Below, piece after piece: positions 4,683 to 61,145 of a DNA stretch of 64,000 bases. The stretch is taken from contig NW_027361775.1 of assembly GCF_039654945.1 (NCBI RefSeq), positions 11,656,001-11,720,000 on the forward strand, given 5' to 3'. Numbering within the stretch: position 1 is the first letter of the stretch; each line of letters starts with the position of its first letter. The stretch comes from Dendrobates tinctorius (Eukaryota). The notes beneath the pieces were generated by a model. That model worked only from the letters and a program-made list of their open reading frames with translations, had not been told where the DNA came from and did no database searches. The position numbers and the translations under genes were made by a program.

Positions 4683-5603
4683 CTAGATTTTGGCCCGATG
4701 CTATAGCATCGGGAGGATGCGATAGCATCACACCTCTTGCCATGTTAACCCTCAACACACACACTCTCACCTTTCACCATCTCCACTCACTCTTTCACTC
4801 CACATATGACCCCTTCTCTCACTCCGTCTCTCATACTCACGCCGTCATCGCCGCTGCTCCACGATCCCCGACATCCTGGATCCAGACGTTGTCCACGCCG
4901 GCGACATGTTCTTGCGGCGACGTCATCTTGAGTATCGTGAAATCCCGCGATACTCAAGATGGCGTCGCCGGAAGAACATGTCGCCAGCATGGACGACGTC
5001 GGGATCCAAAATGGTGTCGGCGAAATCTCGCGAGTTTTCGCCGACGCCATTTTGGATCCCGACGTCGTCCTCGCCGGCGACATGTTCTTGCGGCGACGCC
5101 ATCTTGAGTATTGCGGGATTTCGCCGATCCAAAATAGCGTCGCCGCAGGAACATGTCCCCAGCGTGGATGCCGTCGGGATCCAAAATGGCGTCGGCGCGA
5201 GATTTCGCTGACGCCATTTTGGATCCCGACGTCCTCCACACCGGCGACATGTTCTTGTGGCGATGCCATCTTGACTATCGCGGGATTTCGCTGATCCAAA
5301 ATGGCGTCGTCGCAAGAACATGTTGCCGGCGTGGAGGACGTCTGGATCCAGGATGGCGCCGGCGGAAGAAGATGTCGGGGATCGTGGATCAGCTGCGATG
5401 ACGGCGTGAGTATGAGAGACGGAGTGAGAGAAAGGGTCGTATGTGGAGTGAAAGAGTGAGTGGACGTGAGTGGAGATGGTGAAAGGTGAGAGGAGTGGTG
5501 TGTTGATGGTTAACATGGAAAGAGGTGTGCGGTGACGTCACCGGTTACAACTGGACGGAAGTTGTTACAACCGGAAGCTGCTTAGGGCATTTATTATTAT
5601 AGA
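4683..5603 (-). mobile_element. Non-autonomous Helitron with a large internal palindrome
   Basis: Minus strand begins TCTATAATAATAA and ends with hairpin CCCGATGC-TATA-GCATCGGG then CCAAAATCTAG; inserted between A and T with no TSD; inverted arms span ~4729-5529. Confidence 0.85.
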
Positions 5604-7070
5604 TAATATAACTAGTCGGAAATCTATTTCAGTTAGGCTTTTCTCTATTTCATTCCATATGAATGTCTTAAACGTGAAATGGTCAACGGTGAAGTCTCAG
5701 GTGTGCTGCACCGGGCGACCTGATTTCAGTAGTATGCCTCCTAGCTTCATGCTCAGGATGAAGGCTTTGGTAAATCTGGCCACCTGCAGCAGATCTGACG
5801 CCGGAACGTTTTGAGCACTAGCGTGCAGGTTTTAGCATAAATCCTTACATACTTTAATAAACCCAGACATGATGGATTTGAAACTTGGCATTTACACACA
5901 TTTTGAATTCATAAGCTGTGGTGTGTATGGAATTTAGAAGTCTTCATATTTCACTGTCGCTGTTCTCCGCATAAGCAAACAGAATGTACCGTACTGTACA
6001 TTGTGCACTTCTTTGTAGGAACATATATCTATAGCACATGCATGACTCAAGAATGGATCGATTTGCAGTTCCCCTTGACCTCACCATATGTATTGTAACG
6101 CTTCAGCTGGCATTATAATACTATCCATGCTTGCAAGAACGAGATCCTACTCAGTGTAAATGCCAGCTGCACATCTGAAGTCATTATGCATGAAAATAAC
6201 ACTATGAAGAAAGAAGGTATCAGAGACACTGCTTATGCTAAATAGAGGTTAACTGAGGTATAGAAGCAGAGATTCATTGGAAAATACATAGAAATGACAG
6301 AGCATACATTTTTCATTATGAATATCTGCTCATCTCGTTAACGCATCTGTCAGAATACTGGAATTATATAGTTAACAGCAAGAATGTCTTCACTGCTATA
6401 TCTTTAAAACTGGTGGGCTGCGTCAATCAGAAAGGGTGTTTAGTAGACTATCTTTGGTTGCCAGGCAACACTAATGTTTGATCATTTTCCATTGTTCGAC
6501 TTCGTCACATAAATGTAATTTCTTTCTCTGATAAATGCCATAAAGAGCGTTTCCACCCCAATTGCAGTTTTTATACAGATACAGAAAAGTGTACATGTAA
6601 AAAGTAAATCATTCTGAGGGTATTTTTTACAACAGTATCCCATATAATTGTTCACCATTCCTAAACTGAGGATGCTAGAAACACTCTGGGTGGCGAAGTG
6701 CAGAAATGAGTGATGTGTGGTGTGTGACTCCCTATATTCCCATGCAACATTGTAAATAGGTTTTATACCAGTGTACAGGCTGAGAAGCATAGACTTAAGA
6801 ATAAGGTGTAATTCCTCCATTAAAATTATTTTCAGTATATATAAAAATTAAAAGGGGCAAAGATCAAGATTATAAATTGGTGATCCCCAAAGAGCTCACT
6901 ACTGGGATTGCCCATCAGTGATTATCAAGGGTACTGAATATTGTGGTGTTTGAGCATTTTGTCTCTTTTGCATAGTTCCTCATTTAAAGCCTCTACTATA
7001 GAATAAGAAGAACAATAACGGTCGTTGCATTTCTTCAGGCTTCATATGTGAAGCATTCCTTGCTGCTTTA

Positions 7071-19680: not shown

Positions 19681-19791
19681 AATCAAATACATTACTTACA
19701 GTACTTTACATATGCGCTGTTCTTACTATGTTTTATAGTCAATTTTGTGGACTGCCCAATCTGCAATGGTAATTGGCAATAAGTGAAGTAA

Positions 19792-21499
19792 TCTACATAT
19801 ATAAATGCCTTATCATGTCTGTCTGTAACCGAAATCGCGGGCAGCTGATTGGTGGCGGCCGCCAGGCTGCCACCAATCAGCGACAGGCGCAGCTGTTTGT
19901 AACGGTAAGCTGCGCCTGCCGCTGATCAGTGGCAGGCGCAGTCGGGCACAGCGCTCAATAGGATGCAGGCCTTAATCTGTAAAGAAGAGAATTAAAATTA
20001 AAAAAAAAGGTTATTCTCACCTTCCGACGGCCTCCTGTCTTCTATCCACGCGCCCGACATCGCGTTCCCAGTAATGCTTTGTGGCTTAGACCGCTGATGA
20101 CGTCACTCTCGCGAGAGCGAGAAAGAAGACCGACGTCACTCTCGCGAGAGCGAGAAAGAAGACCATCAGCGGTATAAGCCGTAAAGCATTACTTGGAACT
20201 CCAGGCCGGGCGCGTGGAAAGAAGACAGGAGGCCGTCAGAAGGTGAGAATAACTTTTTTTTATTTTTTAATATTATTTTTTTACATGCTAGAGGGCCGCG
20301 GCAGTGATTGGTCGCAGATACAGGGCCGTGTTGCTGATTGGTCATGGACAGAGGGCCGTGACGCTGATTGGTTGCGGCTACATGGAAAGGGGGTGAGGGG
20401 ACCATGCATACCAGGAAAGGGGGGTGAGGGGACCATGCATACCAGGATTGAGGGGTGAAGGGACCATGCATACCAGGAAAGGGGGGTGAGGGGACCATGC
20501 ATACCAGGATTGGGGGGTGAGGGGACCATGCATACCAGGAAAGGAGGGTGAGGGGACCATGCATACCAGGAAAGGGGGTGAGGGGACCATGCATACCAGG
20601 AAAAGGGGGTGATGGGACCATGCATACCAGGATTGAGGGGTGAGGGGACCATGCATACCAGGATTGGGGGGTGAGGGGACCATGCATACCAGGATTGGGG
20701 GGTGAGGGGACCATGCATACCAGGAAAGGGTGGTGAGGGGACCATGCATACCAGGAAAGGGGGGTGAGGGGACCATGCATACCAGGAAAGGGGGGTGAGG
20801 GGATCATGCATACCAGGAAAGGGGGTGAGGGGACCATGCATACCAGGATTGGGGGGTGAGGGGACCATGCATACCAGGAAAGGAGGGTGAGGGGACCATG
20901 CATACCAGGAAATAGGGATGAGGGGACCATGCATACCAGGATTGGGGGTGAGGGGACCATGCATACCAGGAAAAGGGGGTGAGGGGACCATGCATACCAG
21001 GATTGGGGGGTGAGGGGACCATGCATACCAGGAAAGGGGGGTGAGGGGATCATGCATACCAGGAAAGAGGGGTGAGAGGATCATGCATACCAGGAAAGAG
21101 GGGTGAGAGGATCATGCATACCAGGATTGGGGGGTGAGAGGACAATGCATTCCAGGATTGGGGGTGAGGGGACCATGCATACCCCGAAAGGGGAGTAAGA
21201 GGACCATGCATACCAGGAAAGAGAGGCGAGAGGACCATGCATACCAGGATTGGGGGTGAGAGGACCATGCATTCCAGGATTGGGGGGTGAGGGGACCATG
21301 CATACCAGGATAAGGGGTTGAAGGGTAGCATGCATATCAGGATTTGGGGTGAGAGAACCATACATATCAGGATCGGGGGTGAGAGAACCATACATATCAG
21401 GATTGGGGGATGCATTATTGCATTATTATTAAATCTTCAAAAATAAACTGCATACATATTCTAGAATACCCGATGCTTTAGAATCGGACCACCATCTAG
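19792..21499 (+). mobile_element. Non-autonomous Helitron carrying a hairpin and a G-rich minisatellite
   Basis: A|TCTACATATATAA start; 3' end CCCGATGCTTTAGAATCGGACCACCATCTAG|T. Confidence 0.85.
20385..21410. repeat. Minisatellite, 30-31-bp unit (GGGGGTGAGGGGACCATGCATACCAGGAAAG/ATT), about 33 copies
   Basis: Direct tandem units, diverging toward the 3' end. Confidence 0.95.
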
Positions 21500-21714
21500 T
21501 CTACTATATAATTGTCTGATTCTGTCTGTCTGTGTGCCTGTCTGTAATGGAAATCCCACCTCGCTGATTGGTCGCGGCAGTTAGGCCGCGACCAATCAGC
21601 GACAGTTGCTTAGTCGTCGTGGCAAAACGGCTGCATTGCTTATTGTACAGGCACATTACAGTCTGTTAAAGGCATTACTGCTGCGTTGCTCATTACACAG
21701 GCACAGTCCTGTAC

Positions 21715-23723
21715 ATATTCTGGAGTACAATACATTAGATAATTAAGTAACAATAGAACAGTGACTGCAGCTCTGGGTGTAACTGTAGTACAATACATTA
21801 GGTGACAGCAGAAAAGTGAATGCAGCTCTGGGTGTAACTGTAGTACAATACATTAGGTAAGATCTAAACAGTGACTGCAGCTCTGGCTGTAACAGGAGTA
21901 TAATACATTAGGTAAGAGCAGAACAGTGACTGCACATCTGGGTGTAACTGGACTACAATACATAAGGTAAAAGCAGAACAGTGACTGCAGCTCTGGGAGT
22001 AACTGGAGTACAATACATTACATAACAGCAGAACAGTGACTGCAGATCTGGGTTTAACTGGAGTACACTACATTAGGTAACAGCAGAACGGTGACTGCAG
22101 CTCTGGGTGTTATGAATGAGTCACTGAAGGAGGAAAAAACAAAAATACAAGCTAAGTCCAGAAAACCGGAGAGGTTGGTAGCTATCAGATTGCAGTCCCC
22201 TGATCCTATCCACAACAACTAACAGTAGCCGTGGGGGGTTCCTACGATGCCCTAGACCCCTCGATCACAGCCGGAGAACTAAATAGGCCTAAAGAAAGAA
22301 AGGGTAAATCTAAACTGCCCCAGAGCAGACCCCAAAGCAATAGACAGCCCCCAACATATAATGACGGTGAAGCAAGAAGAAAACACTAACACAGATAGAA
22401 AGATAGGTTGAGCAAACGATGGGGCCCAAGCTAACTAAAAAGGACAGGATAGAAAAGCTGCTGTCTGCAATCCGCAAAAAACCCTACCAAAAATGTCCCA
22501 ACCGTCTGATAGGAAAAACAGGCCCTGAAGTCGCTAGGACTTCAAAAAGACTATATCAGCACTCAGGTAAATTCTGAAGACAGAGCAAAGAGACAAACTG
22601 ATCAGAGACAAAAATGGAACTCAGCACACCCCCGACCAGGGATGGCTGAACTCCAAAAAACAAGGTAAACAAAACAAAACTAGTAAGTTCAATAGCAGAG
22701 CAAAAAACTTATCTTTGGGAAGCAGGAATCAGACTGGTCTCCAAGAATCCAGCAGAGAAATCACCAGCGACTCAGAAGGGCGTCGGCTGCCTTATATCCA
22801 GTCAGAAATTCCTGTTACCCAGTCATCATCTACCAGATCAGGTGTTTGGTGATCAGCCTCACTACCTTCCTTCACCAGAAGAGGGAGTTCATCAGACATT
22901 GACGGTGAAGGGGAAAATGAACTCACAACATCTTGGTGTAACTGGAGTACACCACATTATGTAACAGCAGAACAGTGACTGCAGATCTGGGTGTAACTGG
23001 AGTACTCTACATTAGGTAGCAGTAGAACAGTGACTGCAGATCTGGGTGTAACTGGAGTACTCTACATTGGCTAACAGCAGAACGGTGACTGCAGCTCTGG
23101 GTGTAACTGGACTACAATACATTTGGTAAAAGCATAACAGCAACTGCAGCTCTGGGAGTAACTGAAGTACAATACAGATTAGATAACAGCAGAACAGTGA
23201 CTGCAGATCTGGGTGTAACTGGAGTACACTACATTAGGTAACAGCAGAACAGTGACTGCAGCTCTGGGTGTAACAGGAGTACATTAGGTAACAGCAGAAC
23301 AGTGACTGCAGATCTGGGTGTAACTGGAGTACAGTACATTAGGTAACAGAAGAACAGTGACTGCAGCTCTGGGTGTAACTGGACTACAATACATTAGGTA
23401 AAAGCAGAACAGTGACTGCAGCTCTGGGATTAACTGGAGTACAATACATTAGATAACAGCAGAACAGTGACAGCAGCTCTGTGTGTAACTGGAGTACAAT
23501 ACATTAGGTAACAGCAGAACAGTGACTGCAGCTCTGGGTGTAACTTGAGTACAATACATTTGGTAAGATCTGAACAGTGACTGCAGCTCTGGCTGTAACT
23601 GGAGTACAATACATTAGGTAACAGCAGAACAGTGACAGCAGCTCCGGGTGTAACTGGAGTACAATACATTAGGTAACAGCAGAACAGTGACAGCAGCTCC
23701 GGGTGTAACAGGAGTATAATTCA
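21715..23723. repeat. Tandem array, 55-bp unit, about 21 copies, split by a solo LTR
   Basis: Unit AGTGACTGCAGCTCTGGGTGTAACTGGAGTACAATACATTAGGTAACAGCAGAAC; unit starts at 23411, 23466 and 23521. Confidence 0.95.
22108..22930. mobile_element. Solo LTR
   Basis: TGTTATGA...TCACAACA termini; near-TSD TCTGGG/TCTTGG; cleanly interrupts a 55-bp unit. Confidence 0.8.
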
Positions 23724-24081
23724 CTAGATGGTGGCCCGATTCTATCGCATCAGGTATTCTAGAGTCTCTGTTAAAATAAAAAATAGTGATATATTCACCT
23801 CCTGATGGCCCCCGGACTTTTTCTCTCTTCTCACCACGCTCCCGGCATCTTACAGTCCCAGTAATGCTTAGTGAGAAGGGCCAGAGATGACGTCACTCTC
23901 GCGAGAGTGTAACGTCATCAGCGGTGTTTCGCGCTAAGCATTACTGAGACCGGAAGATGCCGGGAGCGTGGTGAGAAGAGAGAAAAAGTCCGGGGGCCAT
24001 CAGGAGGTGAATATATCACTATTTTTTATTTTAACAGAGACTCTAGAATACCCAATGCGATATTATCGGGCCACCATCTAG
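23724..24081. repeat. 358-bp palindrome with a Helitron 3' terminus at both ends
   Basis: A|CTAGATGGTGGCCCGAT...ATCGGGCCACCATCTAG|T; centre TCTCG|CGAGA at 23897-23906. Confidence 0.9.
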
Positions 24082-25382
24082 TAGATGATAAAAAAAAATA
24101 TTTAACACACAGGTCTTAGAGCTGAATCTCTTTTACAAGCATATGTTTGGCCTCCTGTTTTAGATTTTTCCAGTAAAAATATGTCATTTCATGGAATAGG
24201 ACATCTAGCTAGAAATGACCTTATGTGCATGAGAACAATAATATTATTTAGAAAAATTGAGAAGAAAATGTCAAATCTTTGCACACACTACTATAAACAC
24301 AGCATGCTTTCCATTACCTGTGACTGCATAGAAGCTAGTGCTTGATTTTCTCAAGATCCAACCAGCATCCGTCTAATCAAGCTCTGTATGCACATATGTT
24401 TGAGCAGGGTTTCTGCGCTGGCCTTGTTTTTAATAGTCATCAGAATAAAGTTTGCATTGTGAGTGTTTCTTGTTTTGTAAAATGAAAATTTCAATATAAC
24501 CTAAACCATAAATAGTGACATAGCTGGAAATCCAAAAGCTGCAATTTTCTATTTCTGCCTGTCTAGTTATGAACTGACTATTTTTAAGGGAAGTTTAGCA
24601 CCACCAGCAAAGTTGTTTGTAGTGCCTACAGCTGTCAGCGCTCATGCTGAATATTCTATTCTGACTTGATACTGCTTCTTTCACATAGAGTCTAGAAAAG
24701 CTCTCTTCCCAGGAGGCAGTCTGTCATTACTTGAGACATGTATATTGTGTTTTCTACAGTATGTGGACCTACGAGCTGGAGTACATTCATTTTATATTCA
24801 TGATGCATATATAGCATGAAATGTGAAAATGTATGGATTTTAGGTTTGATTGAGCACTATTAATATGAATAGATGTTTCCCTGGATATATGGTTGTTTGT
24901 GCACTATATAGGAATTAAACTGGGGTATGGCATTCAATTTTTGCCATTTATATTTTGGAAATACAACTCTACAGGAATTCACACATGCACACCATTATTA
25001 CAAATATTTTTATGACAATGGAACCTGTCAAAGGATGGAATATATCAGGAAGCCAGTAAATAGACAGCTGTTGAAGTTGACATTTGGAAGCATGAAAAAT
25101 TGAAGGGTCAGAGAATCTGAGGGAATCTGACAGAGGTAAAGTTGTGATGGCTAAACCGAATTTATTTTTTCCAAAATGGCAGGTCTTGGGCGATCTTGAT
25201 AGGCTGCAGTATTTACTAGCTACTATAGGTGGTTCAATGGAAGACAGCTGGTGAATGCTCAAAGCTGATTGATTCTTACATGTGTTCCTGACTGCTCTGA
25301 TCCGAAATAAGACCTACAGTAGTATAAATTTATAAAAAATAAATAAATGATGGCTAAAAAGGAAGGTGTCCGAACACACAAT

Positions 25383-55954: not shown

Positions 55955-56740
55955 ACATACATACTACATATATACTACATTCATACAACATTCATACAAC
56001 ATACATACATACTACATACATACTTCATATATACTATATTCATACAGCATACATACATACTACATACATACAACATACATACCACATACATACTTCATAT
56101 ATACTATATTCATACAACATACATACTGTACATACTACATACATACTACATATATACTACATTCATACAACATACATACTACATACATACTTCATATATA
56201 CTATATTCATACAACATACATACATACTACATACATACTACATATATACTACATTCATACAACATACATACATGCTACATACATACTTCATATATACTAC
56301 ATTCATGCAATATGCATACTACATGCATACTACATTCATACAACATACATACTACATACTTCATATATACTACATTCATAAAACATACATACATACTACA
56401 TACATACTACATATATACTACATTCATACACTACATATATACTACATTCATACAGCATACATACATACTACATACATACTTCATATATACTACATTCATA
56501 CAACATACATACATACTACATACTACATATATACTACATTCATACAACATACATACAACATACATACTACATATATACTACATTCATACAACATACATAC
56601 ATAGTACATACAACATACATACTACATGCATACAACATACATAAAACATGCTACAGACATACAACATACATACTACATACTATACATTCAGACATTCATA
56701 CAATACATACATATAGACATACAGTACATATAACATAGAG
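55955..56740. repeat. Complex (CATA/CTA)n microsatellite in the left arm; inverse (TATG/TAG)n at 57200-57337, 58559-59060 and 60144-60415
   Basis: Visible simple-repeat blocks on opposite strands. Confidence 0.92.
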
Positions 56741-57337: not shown

Positions 57338-58558
57338 CACTCACTGGCCACTTTATTAGGTACACCTGTCCAACTGTGTGTTAAGACTTAATTTCTAATC
57401 AGCCAATCACATGGTGGCAACTCAGTGCATTTAGGCATGTAGACATGGTCAAGACAATCTCCTGCAGTTCAAACCGAGCATCAGTATGGGGAAGAAAGGT
57501 GATTTGAGTGCCTTTGAACGTGGCATGATTGTTGGTGCCAGAAGGGCTGGTCTGAGAATTTCAGAAACTGCTGATCTACTGGGATTTTCACGCACAACCA
57601 TCTCTAGGGTTTACAGAGAATGGTCCGAAAAAGAAAAAAAATCCAGTGAGCGGCAGTTCTGTGGCCAGAAATGCCATGTTGATGCCAGAGGTCAGAGGAG
57701 AATGGGCAGACTGGTTCGAGCTGATAGAAAGGCAACAGTGACTCAAATTGCCACCCGTTACAACCAAGGTAGGCAGAAGAGCATCTCTGAACGCACAGTG
57801 CGTCGAACTTTGAGGCAGATGGGCTACAGCAGCAGAAGACCACACTGGGTACCACTCCTCTCAGCTAAGAACAGGAAACTGAGGCTACAATTTGCACAAG
57901 CTCATCGAAATTGGACAGTAGAAGATTGGAAAAACGTTGCCTGGTCTGATGAGTCTCGATTTCTGCTGCGACATTCGGATGGTAGGGTCAGAATTTGGCG
58001 TAAACAACATGAAAGCATGGATCCATCCTGCCTTGTATCAACGGTTCAGGCTGGTGGTGGTAGTGTCATGGTGTGGGGAATTTTTTCTGGGCACTCTTTG
58101 GGCCCCTTGGTACCAATTGAGCATCGTTGCAATGCCACAGCCTACCTGAGTATTGTTGCTGACCATGTCCATCCCTTTATGACCACAATGTACCCAACAT
58201 CTGATGGCTACTTTCAGCAGGATAATGCGCCATGTCATAAAGCTCGAATCATCTCAGATTGGTTTCTTGAACATGACAATGAGTTTACTGTACTCAAATG
58301 GCCTCCTCAGTCACCAGATCTCAATCCAATAGAGCATCTTTGGGATGTGGTGGAACGGGAGATTCGCATCAGGGATGTGCAGCCGACAAATCTGCGCCAA
58401 CTGTGTGATGCCATCATGTCAATATGGTCCAAAATCTCTGAGGAATGCTTCCAGCACCTTGTTGAATCTCTGCCACGAAGAATTGAGGCAGTTCTGAAGG
58501 CAAAAGGGGGTCCAACCCCTTACTAGCATGGTGTACCTAATAAAGTGGCCAGTGAGTG
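57338..58558 (+). mobile_element. Intact Tc1/mariner transposon, DD36E (Incomer-type)
   Basis: 1221 bp; perfect 29-bp TIR CACTCACTGGCCACTTTATTAGGTACACC; TA TSD. Confidence 0.95.
57486..58526 (+). CDS. Tc1-family transposase, 346 aa, DD36E
   Basis: Uninterrupted ORF with an HTH N-terminus, WSDES, FQQDNAP and [11 protein letters not shown]; 36 residues between the second D and the E. Confidence 0.95.
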
Positions 58559-59058
58559 TATGTAGTAAGTATGTAGTATGTAGTATGTATGTATGTATGT
58601 TGCATGAATGTAGTATATATGTAGTATGTATGTAGTATGTATGTATGTTGTATGAATGTAGTATATATGTAGTATGTATATAGTATGTAGTATGTATGTT
58701 GTATGAATGTAGTATATATGAAGTATGTATGTGGTATGTATGTTTTATGAATGTAGTATATATGTAGTATGTATGTAGTATGTATGTATGTTGTATGAAT
58801 ATAGTATATATGAAGTATGTATGTAGTATGTATGTATGCTGTATGAATGTATTGTATGTAGTATGTATGTAGTATGTATGTTGTATGTATGTAGCATGTT
58901 GTTTGTATGTTGTATGTATGTAGCAACTATGTAGTATCTAGTATGTACAGTATGTATGTATGTATGTTGCATGAATGTAGTATATATGTAGTATGTATGT
59001 AGTATGTAGTAGGTATGTATGTTGTATGAATGTAGTATATATGTAGTATGTATGTAGT

Positions 59059-60143
59059 ATACAAATAAAGAAAAAAATAGAGTAGCCATAAACCACAATA
59101 GAAATGTAAGAAAAATGAAAAATCTTTATTAACACATCTTAAAACAAAATAAGACATTTATAAACACATAACAGAGGTAGATATACAAGGAATAATCCCA
59201 GTGTAGCACACGGTAGACATCCCTATATATAAAGTGACAGCAGGCCAAAGCACCATATGTTACAAGTATGAAACTTAGTCTAAGCACCAAAACGTATTGT
59301 GCAACTTATCCAGAGACAATGTCTCTATGTACCTAAAAAGGACCGGGTGCTGTATATAGCATGATGCTAAAATTTATATAAACAATTACTGGCTAGGAGA
59401 AAAATATATCAATCAATTCTGGGATCATACCAAATATCCATATTGCTCATGCCACTTACCCATAAGGGAATATAAATGCAGGGAGGATACCGCGTTCAAC
59501 CCCGACGCGCATTTCGCCTCGGCTTTCTCAAGGGGAAGTGCCTATCTATCCTCAAGCACCCATATATAAATGCAGCGTTCCAGGTGTAGCTAATCAGTAA
59601 CGGCGCATGCCCAGTGTAGCCGCATAGTAACCGCGCGATGACCTGCCGCCATCAGTGAGTGGCGCGCGTGCGCGGTGAAAAAACACCGCTAGACGTCATC
59701 AACACGCGCGCGACCCACAATATGATGGCCGGAGCATCGCGACCAATGCCGGGCACACCGCGCATGCGCTCAGGATCAGCGCCATGTTCTCGGAGACACT
59801 GCAAGCGGCCATACTTGTAACATATGGTGCTTTGGCCTGCTGTCACTTTATATATAGGGATGTCTACCGTGTGCTACACTGGGATTATTCCTTGTATATC
59901 TACCTCTGTTATGTGTTTATAAATGTCTGATTTTGTTTTAAGATGTGTTAATAAAGATTTTTCATTTTTCTTACATTTCTATTGTGGTTTATGGCTACTC
60001 TATTTTTTTCTTTATTTGTATGTTATTGGGAGTACTCCACTATTGTCTTATTAGCCCTAATTTTTGGTGGGGGAACTATGATTGTTTTCGAACTGGTTCC
60101 TGACCACGTTTTATAGTTATGAAGGTTTTGAATTTGTCTTCAA
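59059..60143. mobile_element. Penelope-like element fragment with an inverted duplication
   Basis: ~212-bp near-perfect inverted repeat (59059-59270 / 59810-60022); hammerhead-like motif at 59500-59535; interrupts the TATG microsatellite. Confidence 0.7.
59500..59535 (-). ncRNA. Degenerate minimal hammerhead-ribozyme-like motif
   Basis: Minus strand reads CCCC-UUGAGAAA-GCC-GA-GGC-GAAA-UGCGCGUC-GGGG; the core deviates from CUGANGA. Confidence 0.4.
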
Positions 60144-61145
60144 TATGTATGTAGTATGTAGTATGTATGTTGTATGAATGTAGTATATATGTAGTATGTA
60201 TGTAGTACTGTATGTATGTTGTATGAATGTAGTATGTATGTAGTATGAGGTATGTATGTATGTTGTATGAATGTAGTATATATGTAGTATGTATGTAGTA
60301 TGTATGTATTTAGTATGTATGAATGTAGTATATATGTAGTATGTATGTAGTATGTATGTATGTTGTATGAATGTTGTATATATGTAGTATGTATGTAGTA
60401 TGTAGTATGTATGTTTTATTGTTTTTTTTACATTCAACACATTAGCCGGATGATGGGACTACTACTGTCCCATAATTGGCTAATGTGTCAATCACTGTCA
60501 TTGTAGCAGGCATAGCCCGATGGGACTTGTAGTCCCATCGGACGATGCCTGCACGCACACACAACCCCCGGCAGGCCCGCACAGACCCCCGACAGGCCCG
60601 TACAGACCCCCGGCAGCCCACACAGACCCCGACAGACCCGTACATACCCCCGGCAGGCCCGCACAGACCCCGGCAGCCCGCACAGACCCCCGGCAGGCCC
60701 GCACAGACCCCCGGCAGGCCCACACAGACCGCGCATCATGATGCGCACAGACCACGCATAATGATGACATCATTTCAGCAGCCAATCACTGCCACAACAC
60801 TGGCTCATTGCATTATGGGAACTTCCGATTCCGGTATCCGACATTGTAAAAAAATCGGTACTCGGTATCGGAATTCCGATACAGCGAATATCGGCCCATA
60901 CCCGATATTTGCAGTATCGGAATGCTCAACACTACTCTCCAGTAGAATATAAAAGCTTATGTTCAGCAGAGTCATTTTTTGTGTGCCAAAATGTTTTGTC
61001 TAATAAAAGAAATATCATCTACAATTCTCACAGCGAGAGACCTTCTTACAACCGCACAGCCTATTTTAAAGTGTTTTTATTCCTTTGGTACATTTTACCT
61101 GATTAATCTCCTCCAGCCACAAGGCAGCAGCAGTTTGATTTTTAA

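What the first reader, a model, noticed from the sequence alone, without database searches (positions are those of the whole stretch)
23724..24081. Palindrome with a Helitron 3' terminus at both ends
Seen: a 358-bp inverted repeat whose two ends each read hairpin + GGGCCACCATCTAG outward, flanked A|...|T, with no TC 5' end between them. Known: canonical Helitrons are asymmetric (5' TC, 3' hairpin-CTRR) and lack TIRs. Inference: either a strand switch at the internal hairpin during rolling-circle replication copied the 3' end back, or this is an independently mobile 3'-3' foldback Helitron derivative that mimics a MITE.
Basis: partly seen in the sequence, partly recalled or inferred. Interest (0 to 1): 0.72.

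Follow-up and report, generated by a model that had tools for sequence, protein, structure and literature searches.

The report
Helitron tail with inverted second terminus
The 358-bp palindrome is real, but it is the rearranged 3' tail of an ordinary non-autonomous Helitron transposon, carrying an extra upside-down copy of the 40-bp Helitron end, and nothing here shows that it moves on its own.

Summary
Window 23724-24081 is a 2 x 179-nt inverted repeat (18 mismatches). Each outer end carries a Helitron 3' terminus: a hairpin, then 11 nt ending in CTAG. The outside flanks are A and T.

The palindrome has three parts:
- an inverted 40-bp terminus (23724-23763);
- a roughly 278-bp palindromic, CpG-rich cassette (23764-24041);
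- the forward 40-bp terminus (24042-24081).

The neighbouring Helitron also carries the cassette, but far from its own end.

The unit closes a 2.6-kb non-autonomous Helitron (21500-24081). That element has a 5' TC end and a 55-bp satellite, and it sits head-to-tail behind another Helitron (19792-21499).

Two observations argue against a separate insertion of the 358 bp here. The satellite stops at one of its two AT dinucleotides, exactly where the inverted terminus begins. It does not resume on the right, where the DNA is single-copy.

My best reading (about 0.45) is that a sister Helitron inserted into the satellite in the opposite orientation. Recombination between the two palindromic cassettes then removed the rest of it.

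The rivals are a strand switch during rolling-circle copying (about 0.25) and a truly mobile 3'-3' foldback (about 0.12).

The genome-wide copy census that would decide this could not be run. Earlier notes of this scan on the same genome describe Helitrons with foldback bodies.

The parts
23724..23763 (-). Inverted copy of the 40-bp Helitron 3' terminus (hairpin CCTGAT/ATCGGG, then CCACCATCTAG). It abuts A at 23723.
   Evidence: 76 family contigs diverge from the window exactly at 23763
23764..24041 (.). Palindromic CpG-rich family cassette. The outer 88 bp of each arm are identical; the inner 51 bp of each arm carry 14 mismatches.
   Evidence: homologous to 19978-20285 in the neighbouring Helitron
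23888..23906 (.). Centre of the cassette: TGACGTCA (CRE-like) followed by the palindromic TCTCGCGAGA motif.
   Evidence: all three TCTCGCGAGA sites of the window lie in Helitron cassettes
24042..24081 (+). Forward 40-bp Helitron 3' terminus, taken as the element's own end. It is followed by T and single-copy DNA.
   Evidence: contigs from two studies cross 24081|24082 (records 8 and 23)
21500..21741 (+). 5' end region of the Helitron that owns the palindrome (TCTACTATATAA..., with a CCAAT-bearing hairpin).
21742..23723 (+). 55-bp satellite cargo (21742-22110 and 22931-23723), interrupted by an unrelated 820-bp insert (22111-22930). The array ends at consensus position 26, ...AATACA|TTAGG.
19792..21499 (+). 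Upstream Helitron. It has the same type of ends, its own cassette at 19978-20285 and a 31-bp satellite at 20384-21409. It is inserted at the A|T 5' junction of the next element.
4683..5604 (-). Third related Helitron: a 5' end, then an ~800-bp palindrome running to within about 5 bp of the terminus, then the 3' end. It has no second terminus.

Best explanation
The palindrome is the 3' tail of a dead, non-autonomous canonical Helitron at 21500-24081. Shown: the family carries a palindromic, CpG-rich, promoter-like cassette, and in this copy the cassette lies directly against the element's own 40-bp 3' terminus. A second 40-bp terminus sits inverted on the other side of the cassette, joined to an AT dinucleotide of the element's internal satellite. 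Inferred: a sister Helitron inserted into the satellite in the opposite orientation, which made the A|CTAG junction. Because the cassette reads nearly the same on both strands, the sister's cassette and the resident cassette were direct repeats. Recombination between them deleted the sister's body and the remaining satellite. What is left is inverted terminus, cassette, forward terminus. The unit is not a transposon of its own. It could travel only as part of the whole element, started from the 5' end at 21500.
For: The host element has canonical ends, and the same 40-bp terminus closes two other canonical Helitrons in the window. The cassette occurs without termini in the neighbouring Helitron. 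The terminus is the only part that most family copies share, since 76 contigs diverge at 23763. The satellite is cut exactly at one of its two AT dinucleotides per 55-bp unit, 3.6% by chance, as a transposase-made junction predicts. The right flank is not satellite (alignment score 11 against 10.0 +/- 4.3 for shuffles) and has single-copy depth. The forward terminus therefore closes the 21500 element. Nesting at Helitron borders happens at this very locus, where the 19792 element sits in the A|T 5' junction of the 21500 element. Helitrons with multiple termini that arose by nesting, including opposite-orientation nesting, are described in PMC3288121 and PMC5148889.
Against: No intermediate was seen, that is, no inverted sister still carrying its 5' end. 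No genome-wide census was possible. The outer cassette arms are identical over 88 bp and share letters that differ from most family contigs. The sister would therefore have to be nearly identical to the resident copy, or the arms were later homogenised. That pattern is equally natural for an intramolecular copy. The AT junction argument rests on a single event (p about 0.04).
Confidence: 0.45

Rival explanations
1. Strand switch during rolling-circle copying or repair. Synthesis that had reached the satellite jumped onto the cleaved 3' end of the displaced strand, or the nascent strand folded back on the cassette. It copied the terminus and the outer arm in reverse, then returned through the palindromic cassette. 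This extended the palindrome exactly to the physical DNA end at CTAG.
For: The left arm stops exactly at the terminus. The outer arms have a 99-bp perfect run, while the inner 51 bp per arm carry 14 mismatches (Fisher p = 6.5e-6). This is as expected if the outer parts were copied from each other after the centre had diverged. Both arms share letters that differ from the family majority (table 3). An earlier unchecked note on this genome (s1-389209) reports an inverted copy of a Helitron 5' end plus outside flank, which would be the same kind of event.
Against: It does not predict that the satellite breaks at an AT (3.6% by chance). It needs two precise template switches. The terminus pair is more diverged (4 mismatched positions in 40) than the adjoining arms (0 in 88), although two of the three underlying events are CpG transitions.
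Confidence: 0.25
2. A self-mobile 3'-3' foldback derivative. The unit of inverted terminus, cassette and forward terminus inserted into an AT of the satellite in an ancestor of this element. At the next round of transposition, copying from the 5' end stopped at the unit's forward terminus, which dropped the rest of the satellite.
For: It explains both the AT junction on the left and the missing satellite on the right. [quoted passage not shown] The top strand of an inverted terminus could therefore in principle be nicked like a 5' end. Chimeric Helitrons that arise by termination at a nested element's terminus are an accepted model (PMC5148889).
Against: Deleting the 5' end abolished Helraiser transposition in cells. 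The window holds only this one unit, and it is attached to a 5'-end-bearing element. The other two family members in the window are asymmetric. No copy in an unrelated flank could be shown.
Confidence: 0.12
3. Assembly artefact: a chimeric or foldback read created the left arm.
For: No Logan contig spans the whole palindrome or is shown bridging 23723|23724.
Against: The arms differ at 18 positions and the centre is asymmetric. Artefactual foldbacks are near-perfect. Short-read contigs from two studies reproduce the private variants of the right terminus joined to the unique flank (record 8 covers 24034-24900 with 0 differences; record 23 covers 24046-24726 with 2 differences). The left junction falls at a biologically meaningful AT.
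Confidence: 0.03

Closest known systems
Canonical (Helitron1) non-autonomous Helitrons of amphibians, e.g. the Heli1Xen1 family of Xenopus and Bufo (PMC12001565)
   Same: A 5' TC followed by a TATATAA(A) stretch. A 3' hairpin about 11 nt before CTAG. Insertion between A and T without target duplication. Very many short non-autonomous copies, including tandem arrays.
   Different: The hairpin stem differs (CCCGAT/ATCGGG here, CCCGTTA/TAACGGG reported). No Rep/helicase gene lies in the window, so family membership is untested. That paper does not describe a second, inverted terminus.
Helitrons with multiple termini / chimeric nested Helitrons (maize helA, PMC3288121; Fusarium FoHeli, PMC5148889)
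   Same: Extra copies of a terminus inside one element, explained by one Helitron inserting into another and later transposition or loss of inner parts.
   Different: The reported extra termini are in direct orientation. In maize the inner 3' ends mostly lack an intact CTAG. Here the extra 3' terminus is inverted, intact, and mirrors the true end across a palindromic cassette.
Helitron2/Helentron elements and their non-autonomous HINE/DINE-1 derivatives (PMC4067079, PMC7492417)
   Same: Inverted repeats near the ends, hairpins, and central tandem-repeat cargo.
   Different: By published descriptions (partly from my own knowledge), those have short asymmetric terminal inverted repeats. They also lack the TC...CTAG ends and the A|T insertion site seen here. 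This family shows the Helitron1 hallmarks.
MITEs and foldback transposons
   Same: Small size, long inverted arms, and a very stable hairpin.
   Different: There is no target-site duplication (flanks ...TTCA and TAGA...). In the wider family the termini occur mostly as single, unpaired ends with many different upstream sequences.
Promoter-carrying Helitrons such as the HelibatN elements
   Same: A CpG-rich, promoter-like insert with an outward GT donor, carried inside non-autonomous Helitrons.
   Different: Here the cassette is palindromic (bidirectional). Its promoter activity is inferred from motifs only.

Membership tests
Canonical Helitron (Helitron1), non-autonomous | 3' end CTRR preceded by a short hairpin 10-12 nt upstream | tested here: met
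   Both ends of the unit, and the ends at 21499 and 4683, read stem ATCGGG (or a near variant) plus 11 nt ending in CTAG.
Canonical Helitron (Helitron1), non-autonomous | 5' end begins with TC | tested here: met
   Met for the host element (TCTACTATATAA at 21500) and for the elements at 19792 and 5604. Not met inside 23724-24081 itself.
Canonical Helitron (Helitron1), non-autonomous | Insertion between A and T without target-site duplication | tested here: met
   A|TC at 19791/19792. CTAG|T at 21499/21500, 24081/24082 and, on the minus strand, 4682/4683 and 23723/23724. GA|T at 5604/5605. No direct repeat of the flanks.
Canonical Helitron (Helitron1), non-autonomous | Many copies with the same ends in different flanks | tested here: met
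   At the terminus, 117 + 40 contigs in one run carry heterogeneous AT-rich outside sequence. Word depth is 1e4-1e5 against about 5 for the unique flank. The same holds in a second organism.
Canonical Helitron (Helitron1), non-autonomous | An autonomous partner encoding Rep/helicase | not tested
   No search for a Rep/helicase gene was run. The genome outside the window could not be searched.
MITE / TIR transposon | Terminal inverted repeats flanked by a target-site duplication | tested here: not met
   Inverted ends are present, but the flanks do not repeat at any length from 1 to 3 nt. A TA inside CTAG could mimic a TA duplication. However, in other elements the same end pairs with a TC 5' end.
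Self-mobile 3'-3' foldback Helitron derivative (hypothetical) | If inserted as a unit, the same host sequence continues on both sides | tested here: not met
   Satellite on the left, single-copy non-satellite DNA on the right. This can be rescued only by assuming a later termination at the unit's forward terminus.
Self-mobile 3'-3' foldback Helitron derivative (hypothetical) | Several copies with both termini in unrelated flanks | not testable with these tools
   No eukaryotic genome collection was at hand. Public collection scans gave only chance bacterial matches. The Logan contigs are too short to link the two ends.

The most novel reading that the evidence does not exclude
Units made of two inverted Helitron 3' termini around a palindromic cassette are mobile on their own. 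The transposase would nick the top strand at the inverted terminus, since bottom-strand cleavage at the 3' terminus is seen in vitro for Helraiser, and would terminate at the forward one. That would be a MITE-like Helitron derivative needing no 5' end. This copy would then be such a unit captured as the new tail of a satellite-carrying Helitron.
Probability: 0.1. Interest if true: 0.7.

Novelty: new variant of a known kind. Interest (0 to 1): 0.3.

Why it matters
As read here, it is a local rearrangement in one copy of a very abundant Helitron family. It is a tidy example of how palindromic cargo and nesting create Helitrons with extra termini, here in inverted orientation. It also shows why such copies can be mistaken for MITEs by annotation tools. 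It would matter more if a census showed many such units in unrelated flanks. That would mean a Helitron transposase can start from a 3' terminus, against the current view that the 5' end is essential. Separately, the cassette is CpG-rich and carries CRE and TCTCGCGAGA motifs and outward GT donors. Spread in thousands of copies, it is a candidate source of dispersed bidirectional promoters in this genome.

Tried and rejected
1. Census in public collections. The 17-nt terminus pattern gave 0 hits in viral contigs, 29 in metagenome contigs and 15 in bacterial/archaeal genomes. BLAST of the two Helitrons against all 44 loci gave only 20-43-bp matches, and the two loci inspected are bacterial coding sequence. 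These are chance matches.
2. Fetching other copies through translated ORFs. The cassette frame (68 aa) and the satellite ORF (79 aa) found no relatives in the word-indexed protein collection.
3. Exact look-up of the DD36E transposase, to identify the source genome, found nothing on record.
4. Rfam. Nothing in the window reached gathering scores. Two weak chance hits lie in 19700-24200, and there is no hammerhead.
5. The scan's own notes, searched by sequence and by relatives, were blank.
6. MITE reading with a TA duplication. Rejected because in other elements the same end pairs with a TC 5' end.
7. Read laying could not link the two termini or show a contig bridging 23723|23724, because the contigs are about 60-350 nt in the repeat. 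The organism stayed coded. An anuran is suspected only from the resemblance to published frog/toad Helitron ends.

Full report
**The observation.** The region 23724-24081 is a genuine long palindrome. The repeat finder reports arms 23715-23900 and 23905-24090 at 89% complementarity. Self-BLAST gives 90.6% identity to its own reverse complement. A global alignment of the two 179-nt halves has 18 mismatches and no gaps. As single-stranded DNA it folds at -184.6 kcal/mol, against -40.1 +/- 3.8 for shuffles. Both outer ends read a 6-bp-stem hairpin followed by 11 nt ending in CTAG. GGGCCACCATCTAG is exact at both ends, and the window has four matches with up to 2 mismatches against 0.32 expected. 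The outside flanks are A (23723) and T (24082). No 5'-type end lies inside.

**The context is two, and in the window three, canonical Helitrons.**
- 19792-21499 begins A|TCTACATATATAA and ends hairpin-CTAG|T.
- 21500-24081 begins TCTACTATATAA and ends with the right arm of the palindrome.
- The two share the first ~110 bp (76% column identity) and the last 40 bp.
- The T after the first element's CTAG is the first base of the second element. The first element therefore inserted into the A|T made by host A 19791 and the older element's first T.
- A third, related element lies on the minus strand at 4683-5604. It has a 5' end, an ~800-bp palindrome reaching to within about 5 bp of the terminus, and a 3' end.
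- Cargo differs between copies: a 31-bp satellite in the first element and a 55-bp satellite in the second.

**Anatomy of the palindrome.**
- Only the outer 40 bp of each arm are Helitron terminus.
- In the laid contigs of four public runs, 76 contigs of one run leave the window sequence exactly at 23763. They continue with the sequence that precedes the terminus in the 19792 element (table 7).
- The inner ~278 bp (23764-24041) are homologous, at about 70%, to a palindrome inside the 19792 element (19978-20285). That palindrome lies about 1.2 kb from that element's own terminus.
- The structure is therefore inverted terminus, family cassette, forward terminus.
- The cassette centre holds TGACGTCA and TCTCGCGAGA, and all three TCTCGCGAGA sites of the 64-kb window lie in these cassettes.
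- CpG observed/expected is 0.8-1.1 in the unit against 0.25 in the flank.
- The arms end in outward AG|GT sites.

**Mismatch pattern.** The 18 mismatches are unevenly spread: 4 in the 40-bp terminus, 0 in the next 88 bp (a perfect run of 99 bp), and 14 in the inner 51 bp (Fisher p = 6.5e-6). The four terminus mismatches amount to two independent G-to-A changes at one CpG of the hairpin stem, one in each arm, plus one dinucleotide change in the loop of the right arm. Both identical outer arms carry letters that differ from most family contigs, at 23801, 23819, 23824, 23828 and their mirror positions (table 3). The two arms are therefore each other's closest relatives.

**Junctions.** The 55-bp satellite runs in phase up to 23723. 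It is cut after consensus position 26 (...AATACA|TTAGG), one of only two AT dinucleotides in the unit, which is 3.6% by chance. The right flank does not continue the satellite (alignment score 11 against 10.0 +/- 4.3 for shuffles). From about 24110 it has single-copy depth, about 5 against 1e4-1e5 within the repeat. Short-read contigs from two studies reproduce the right terminus with its private variants joined to the unique flank (records 8 and 23). No contig is shown bridging the left junction or spanning the whole unit.

**What this means.** If the 358 bp had inserted here as a unit, satellite should lie on both sides, and it does not. The element starting at 21500 would also be left without a 3' end. 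The forward terminus is therefore best read as that element's own end, and the inverted terminus is the anomaly. Its exact stop at CTAG, against an AT of the satellite, looks like a transposase-made junction. I see three routes to this structure.
- Route 1: a sister copy nested in the satellite in the opposite orientation. The cassette is palindromic, so the sister's cassette and the resident one are direct repeats, and recombination between them removes everything in between. Nesting that creates extra termini is documented (PMC3288121; PMC5148889). Nesting at a Helitron border is visible at this locus.
- Route 2: a strand switch onto the cleaved end of the displaced strand, or a fold-back of the nascent strand, during rolling-circle copying. 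This explains the identical outer arms and the exact stop at the DNA end. It does not explain the AT.
- Route 3: a mobile 3'-3' foldback nested in the satellite, followed by termination at its forward terminus in the next round. This explains both junctions. It requires initiation without a 5' end, whereas deleting the 5' end abolished Helraiser transposition in cells. The same paper does report in-vitro cleavage on both strands of the 3' terminus (PMC4778049).

I rate these routes 0.45, 0.25 and 0.12, and an assembly artefact 0.03. The remainder is unassigned.

**Comparison with known families.** The ends meet every Helitron1 hallmark that could be tested: TC, CTAG, hairpin distance, A|T, no duplication, and many copies in different flanks. 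They resemble the ends described for Heli1Xen1 in Xenopus and Bufo (TC, TATATAAA, hairpin, CTAG), but the stem sequence differs (PMC12001565). Membership in that family is untested, and the organism stayed coded. The unit fails the MITE test because it has no target duplication. It also does not fit Helitron2/Helentron, which has a different kind of ends.

**Limits.** The decisive census of copies with both termini in unrelated flanks could not be run. No eukaryotic genome collection was available. Collection scans returned chance bacterial hits. ORF-based look-ups were blank. Rough depth at the letters diagnostic for this copy's arms suggests that a few tens of similar arms exist (table 3). 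Depth is not a copy count, and it says nothing about the second terminus.

**Earlier scan notes.** Unchecked notes on the same genome describe head-to-tail Helitrons with foldback bodies, one shared terminus with interchangeable satellite cargo, and palindromic promoter-like cassettes. This window agrees with them.

Noticed in passing
window 19792-21499 and 21500-24081: Two different non-autonomous Helitrons lie head to tail. The upstream one sits exactly in the A|T formed by host A 19791 and the first T of the downstream one. It is therefore a later insertion at a Helitron border and not a rolling-circle multimer.
   Followed up: partly
window 23764-24041, 19978-20285: The family cassette looks like a small bidirectional promoter. 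It has a TGACGTCA plus TCTCGCGAGA centre, CpG o/e of 0.8-1.45 against 0.25 in the flank, and outward AG|GTGAAT or AAG|GTGAGA donor-like sites at the arm ends. Activity was not tested.
   Followed up: partly
window 4683-5604 (minus strand): A 0.9-kb Helitron whose body is an ~800-bp palindrome of palindromes (4727-5520). It holds six A[AT]NATGGCG (YY1-like) sites out of ten in the whole window.
   Followed up: partly
window 19836-19886 and 21561-21602; also 20300-20380: The 5' regions of both Helitrons hold a ~45-bp hairpin with an inverted pair of CCAAT/ATTGG boxes. The first element has three more ATTGG units in a 30-bp tandem repeat.
   Followed up: no
window 22111-22930: An 820-bp sequence with no other match in the window interrupts the 55-bp satellite. 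Its nature is unknown, and no clear inverted ends were seen by eye.
   Followed up: partly
window 55963-56578 (+) and 58613-60388 (-): Arrays of a repeat containing ACTACATATATAC lie in opposite orientation on either side of the DD36E transposase ORF (57486-58526). They look like long repeat-filled inverted arms.
   Followed up: no
window 24110-24335: In the related organism B (run X13) no contig covers this stretch of the right flank, while 24336-24900 is covered at about 97.7% identity. This may be an indel or a different insertion boundary at the orthologous locus.
   Followed up: no
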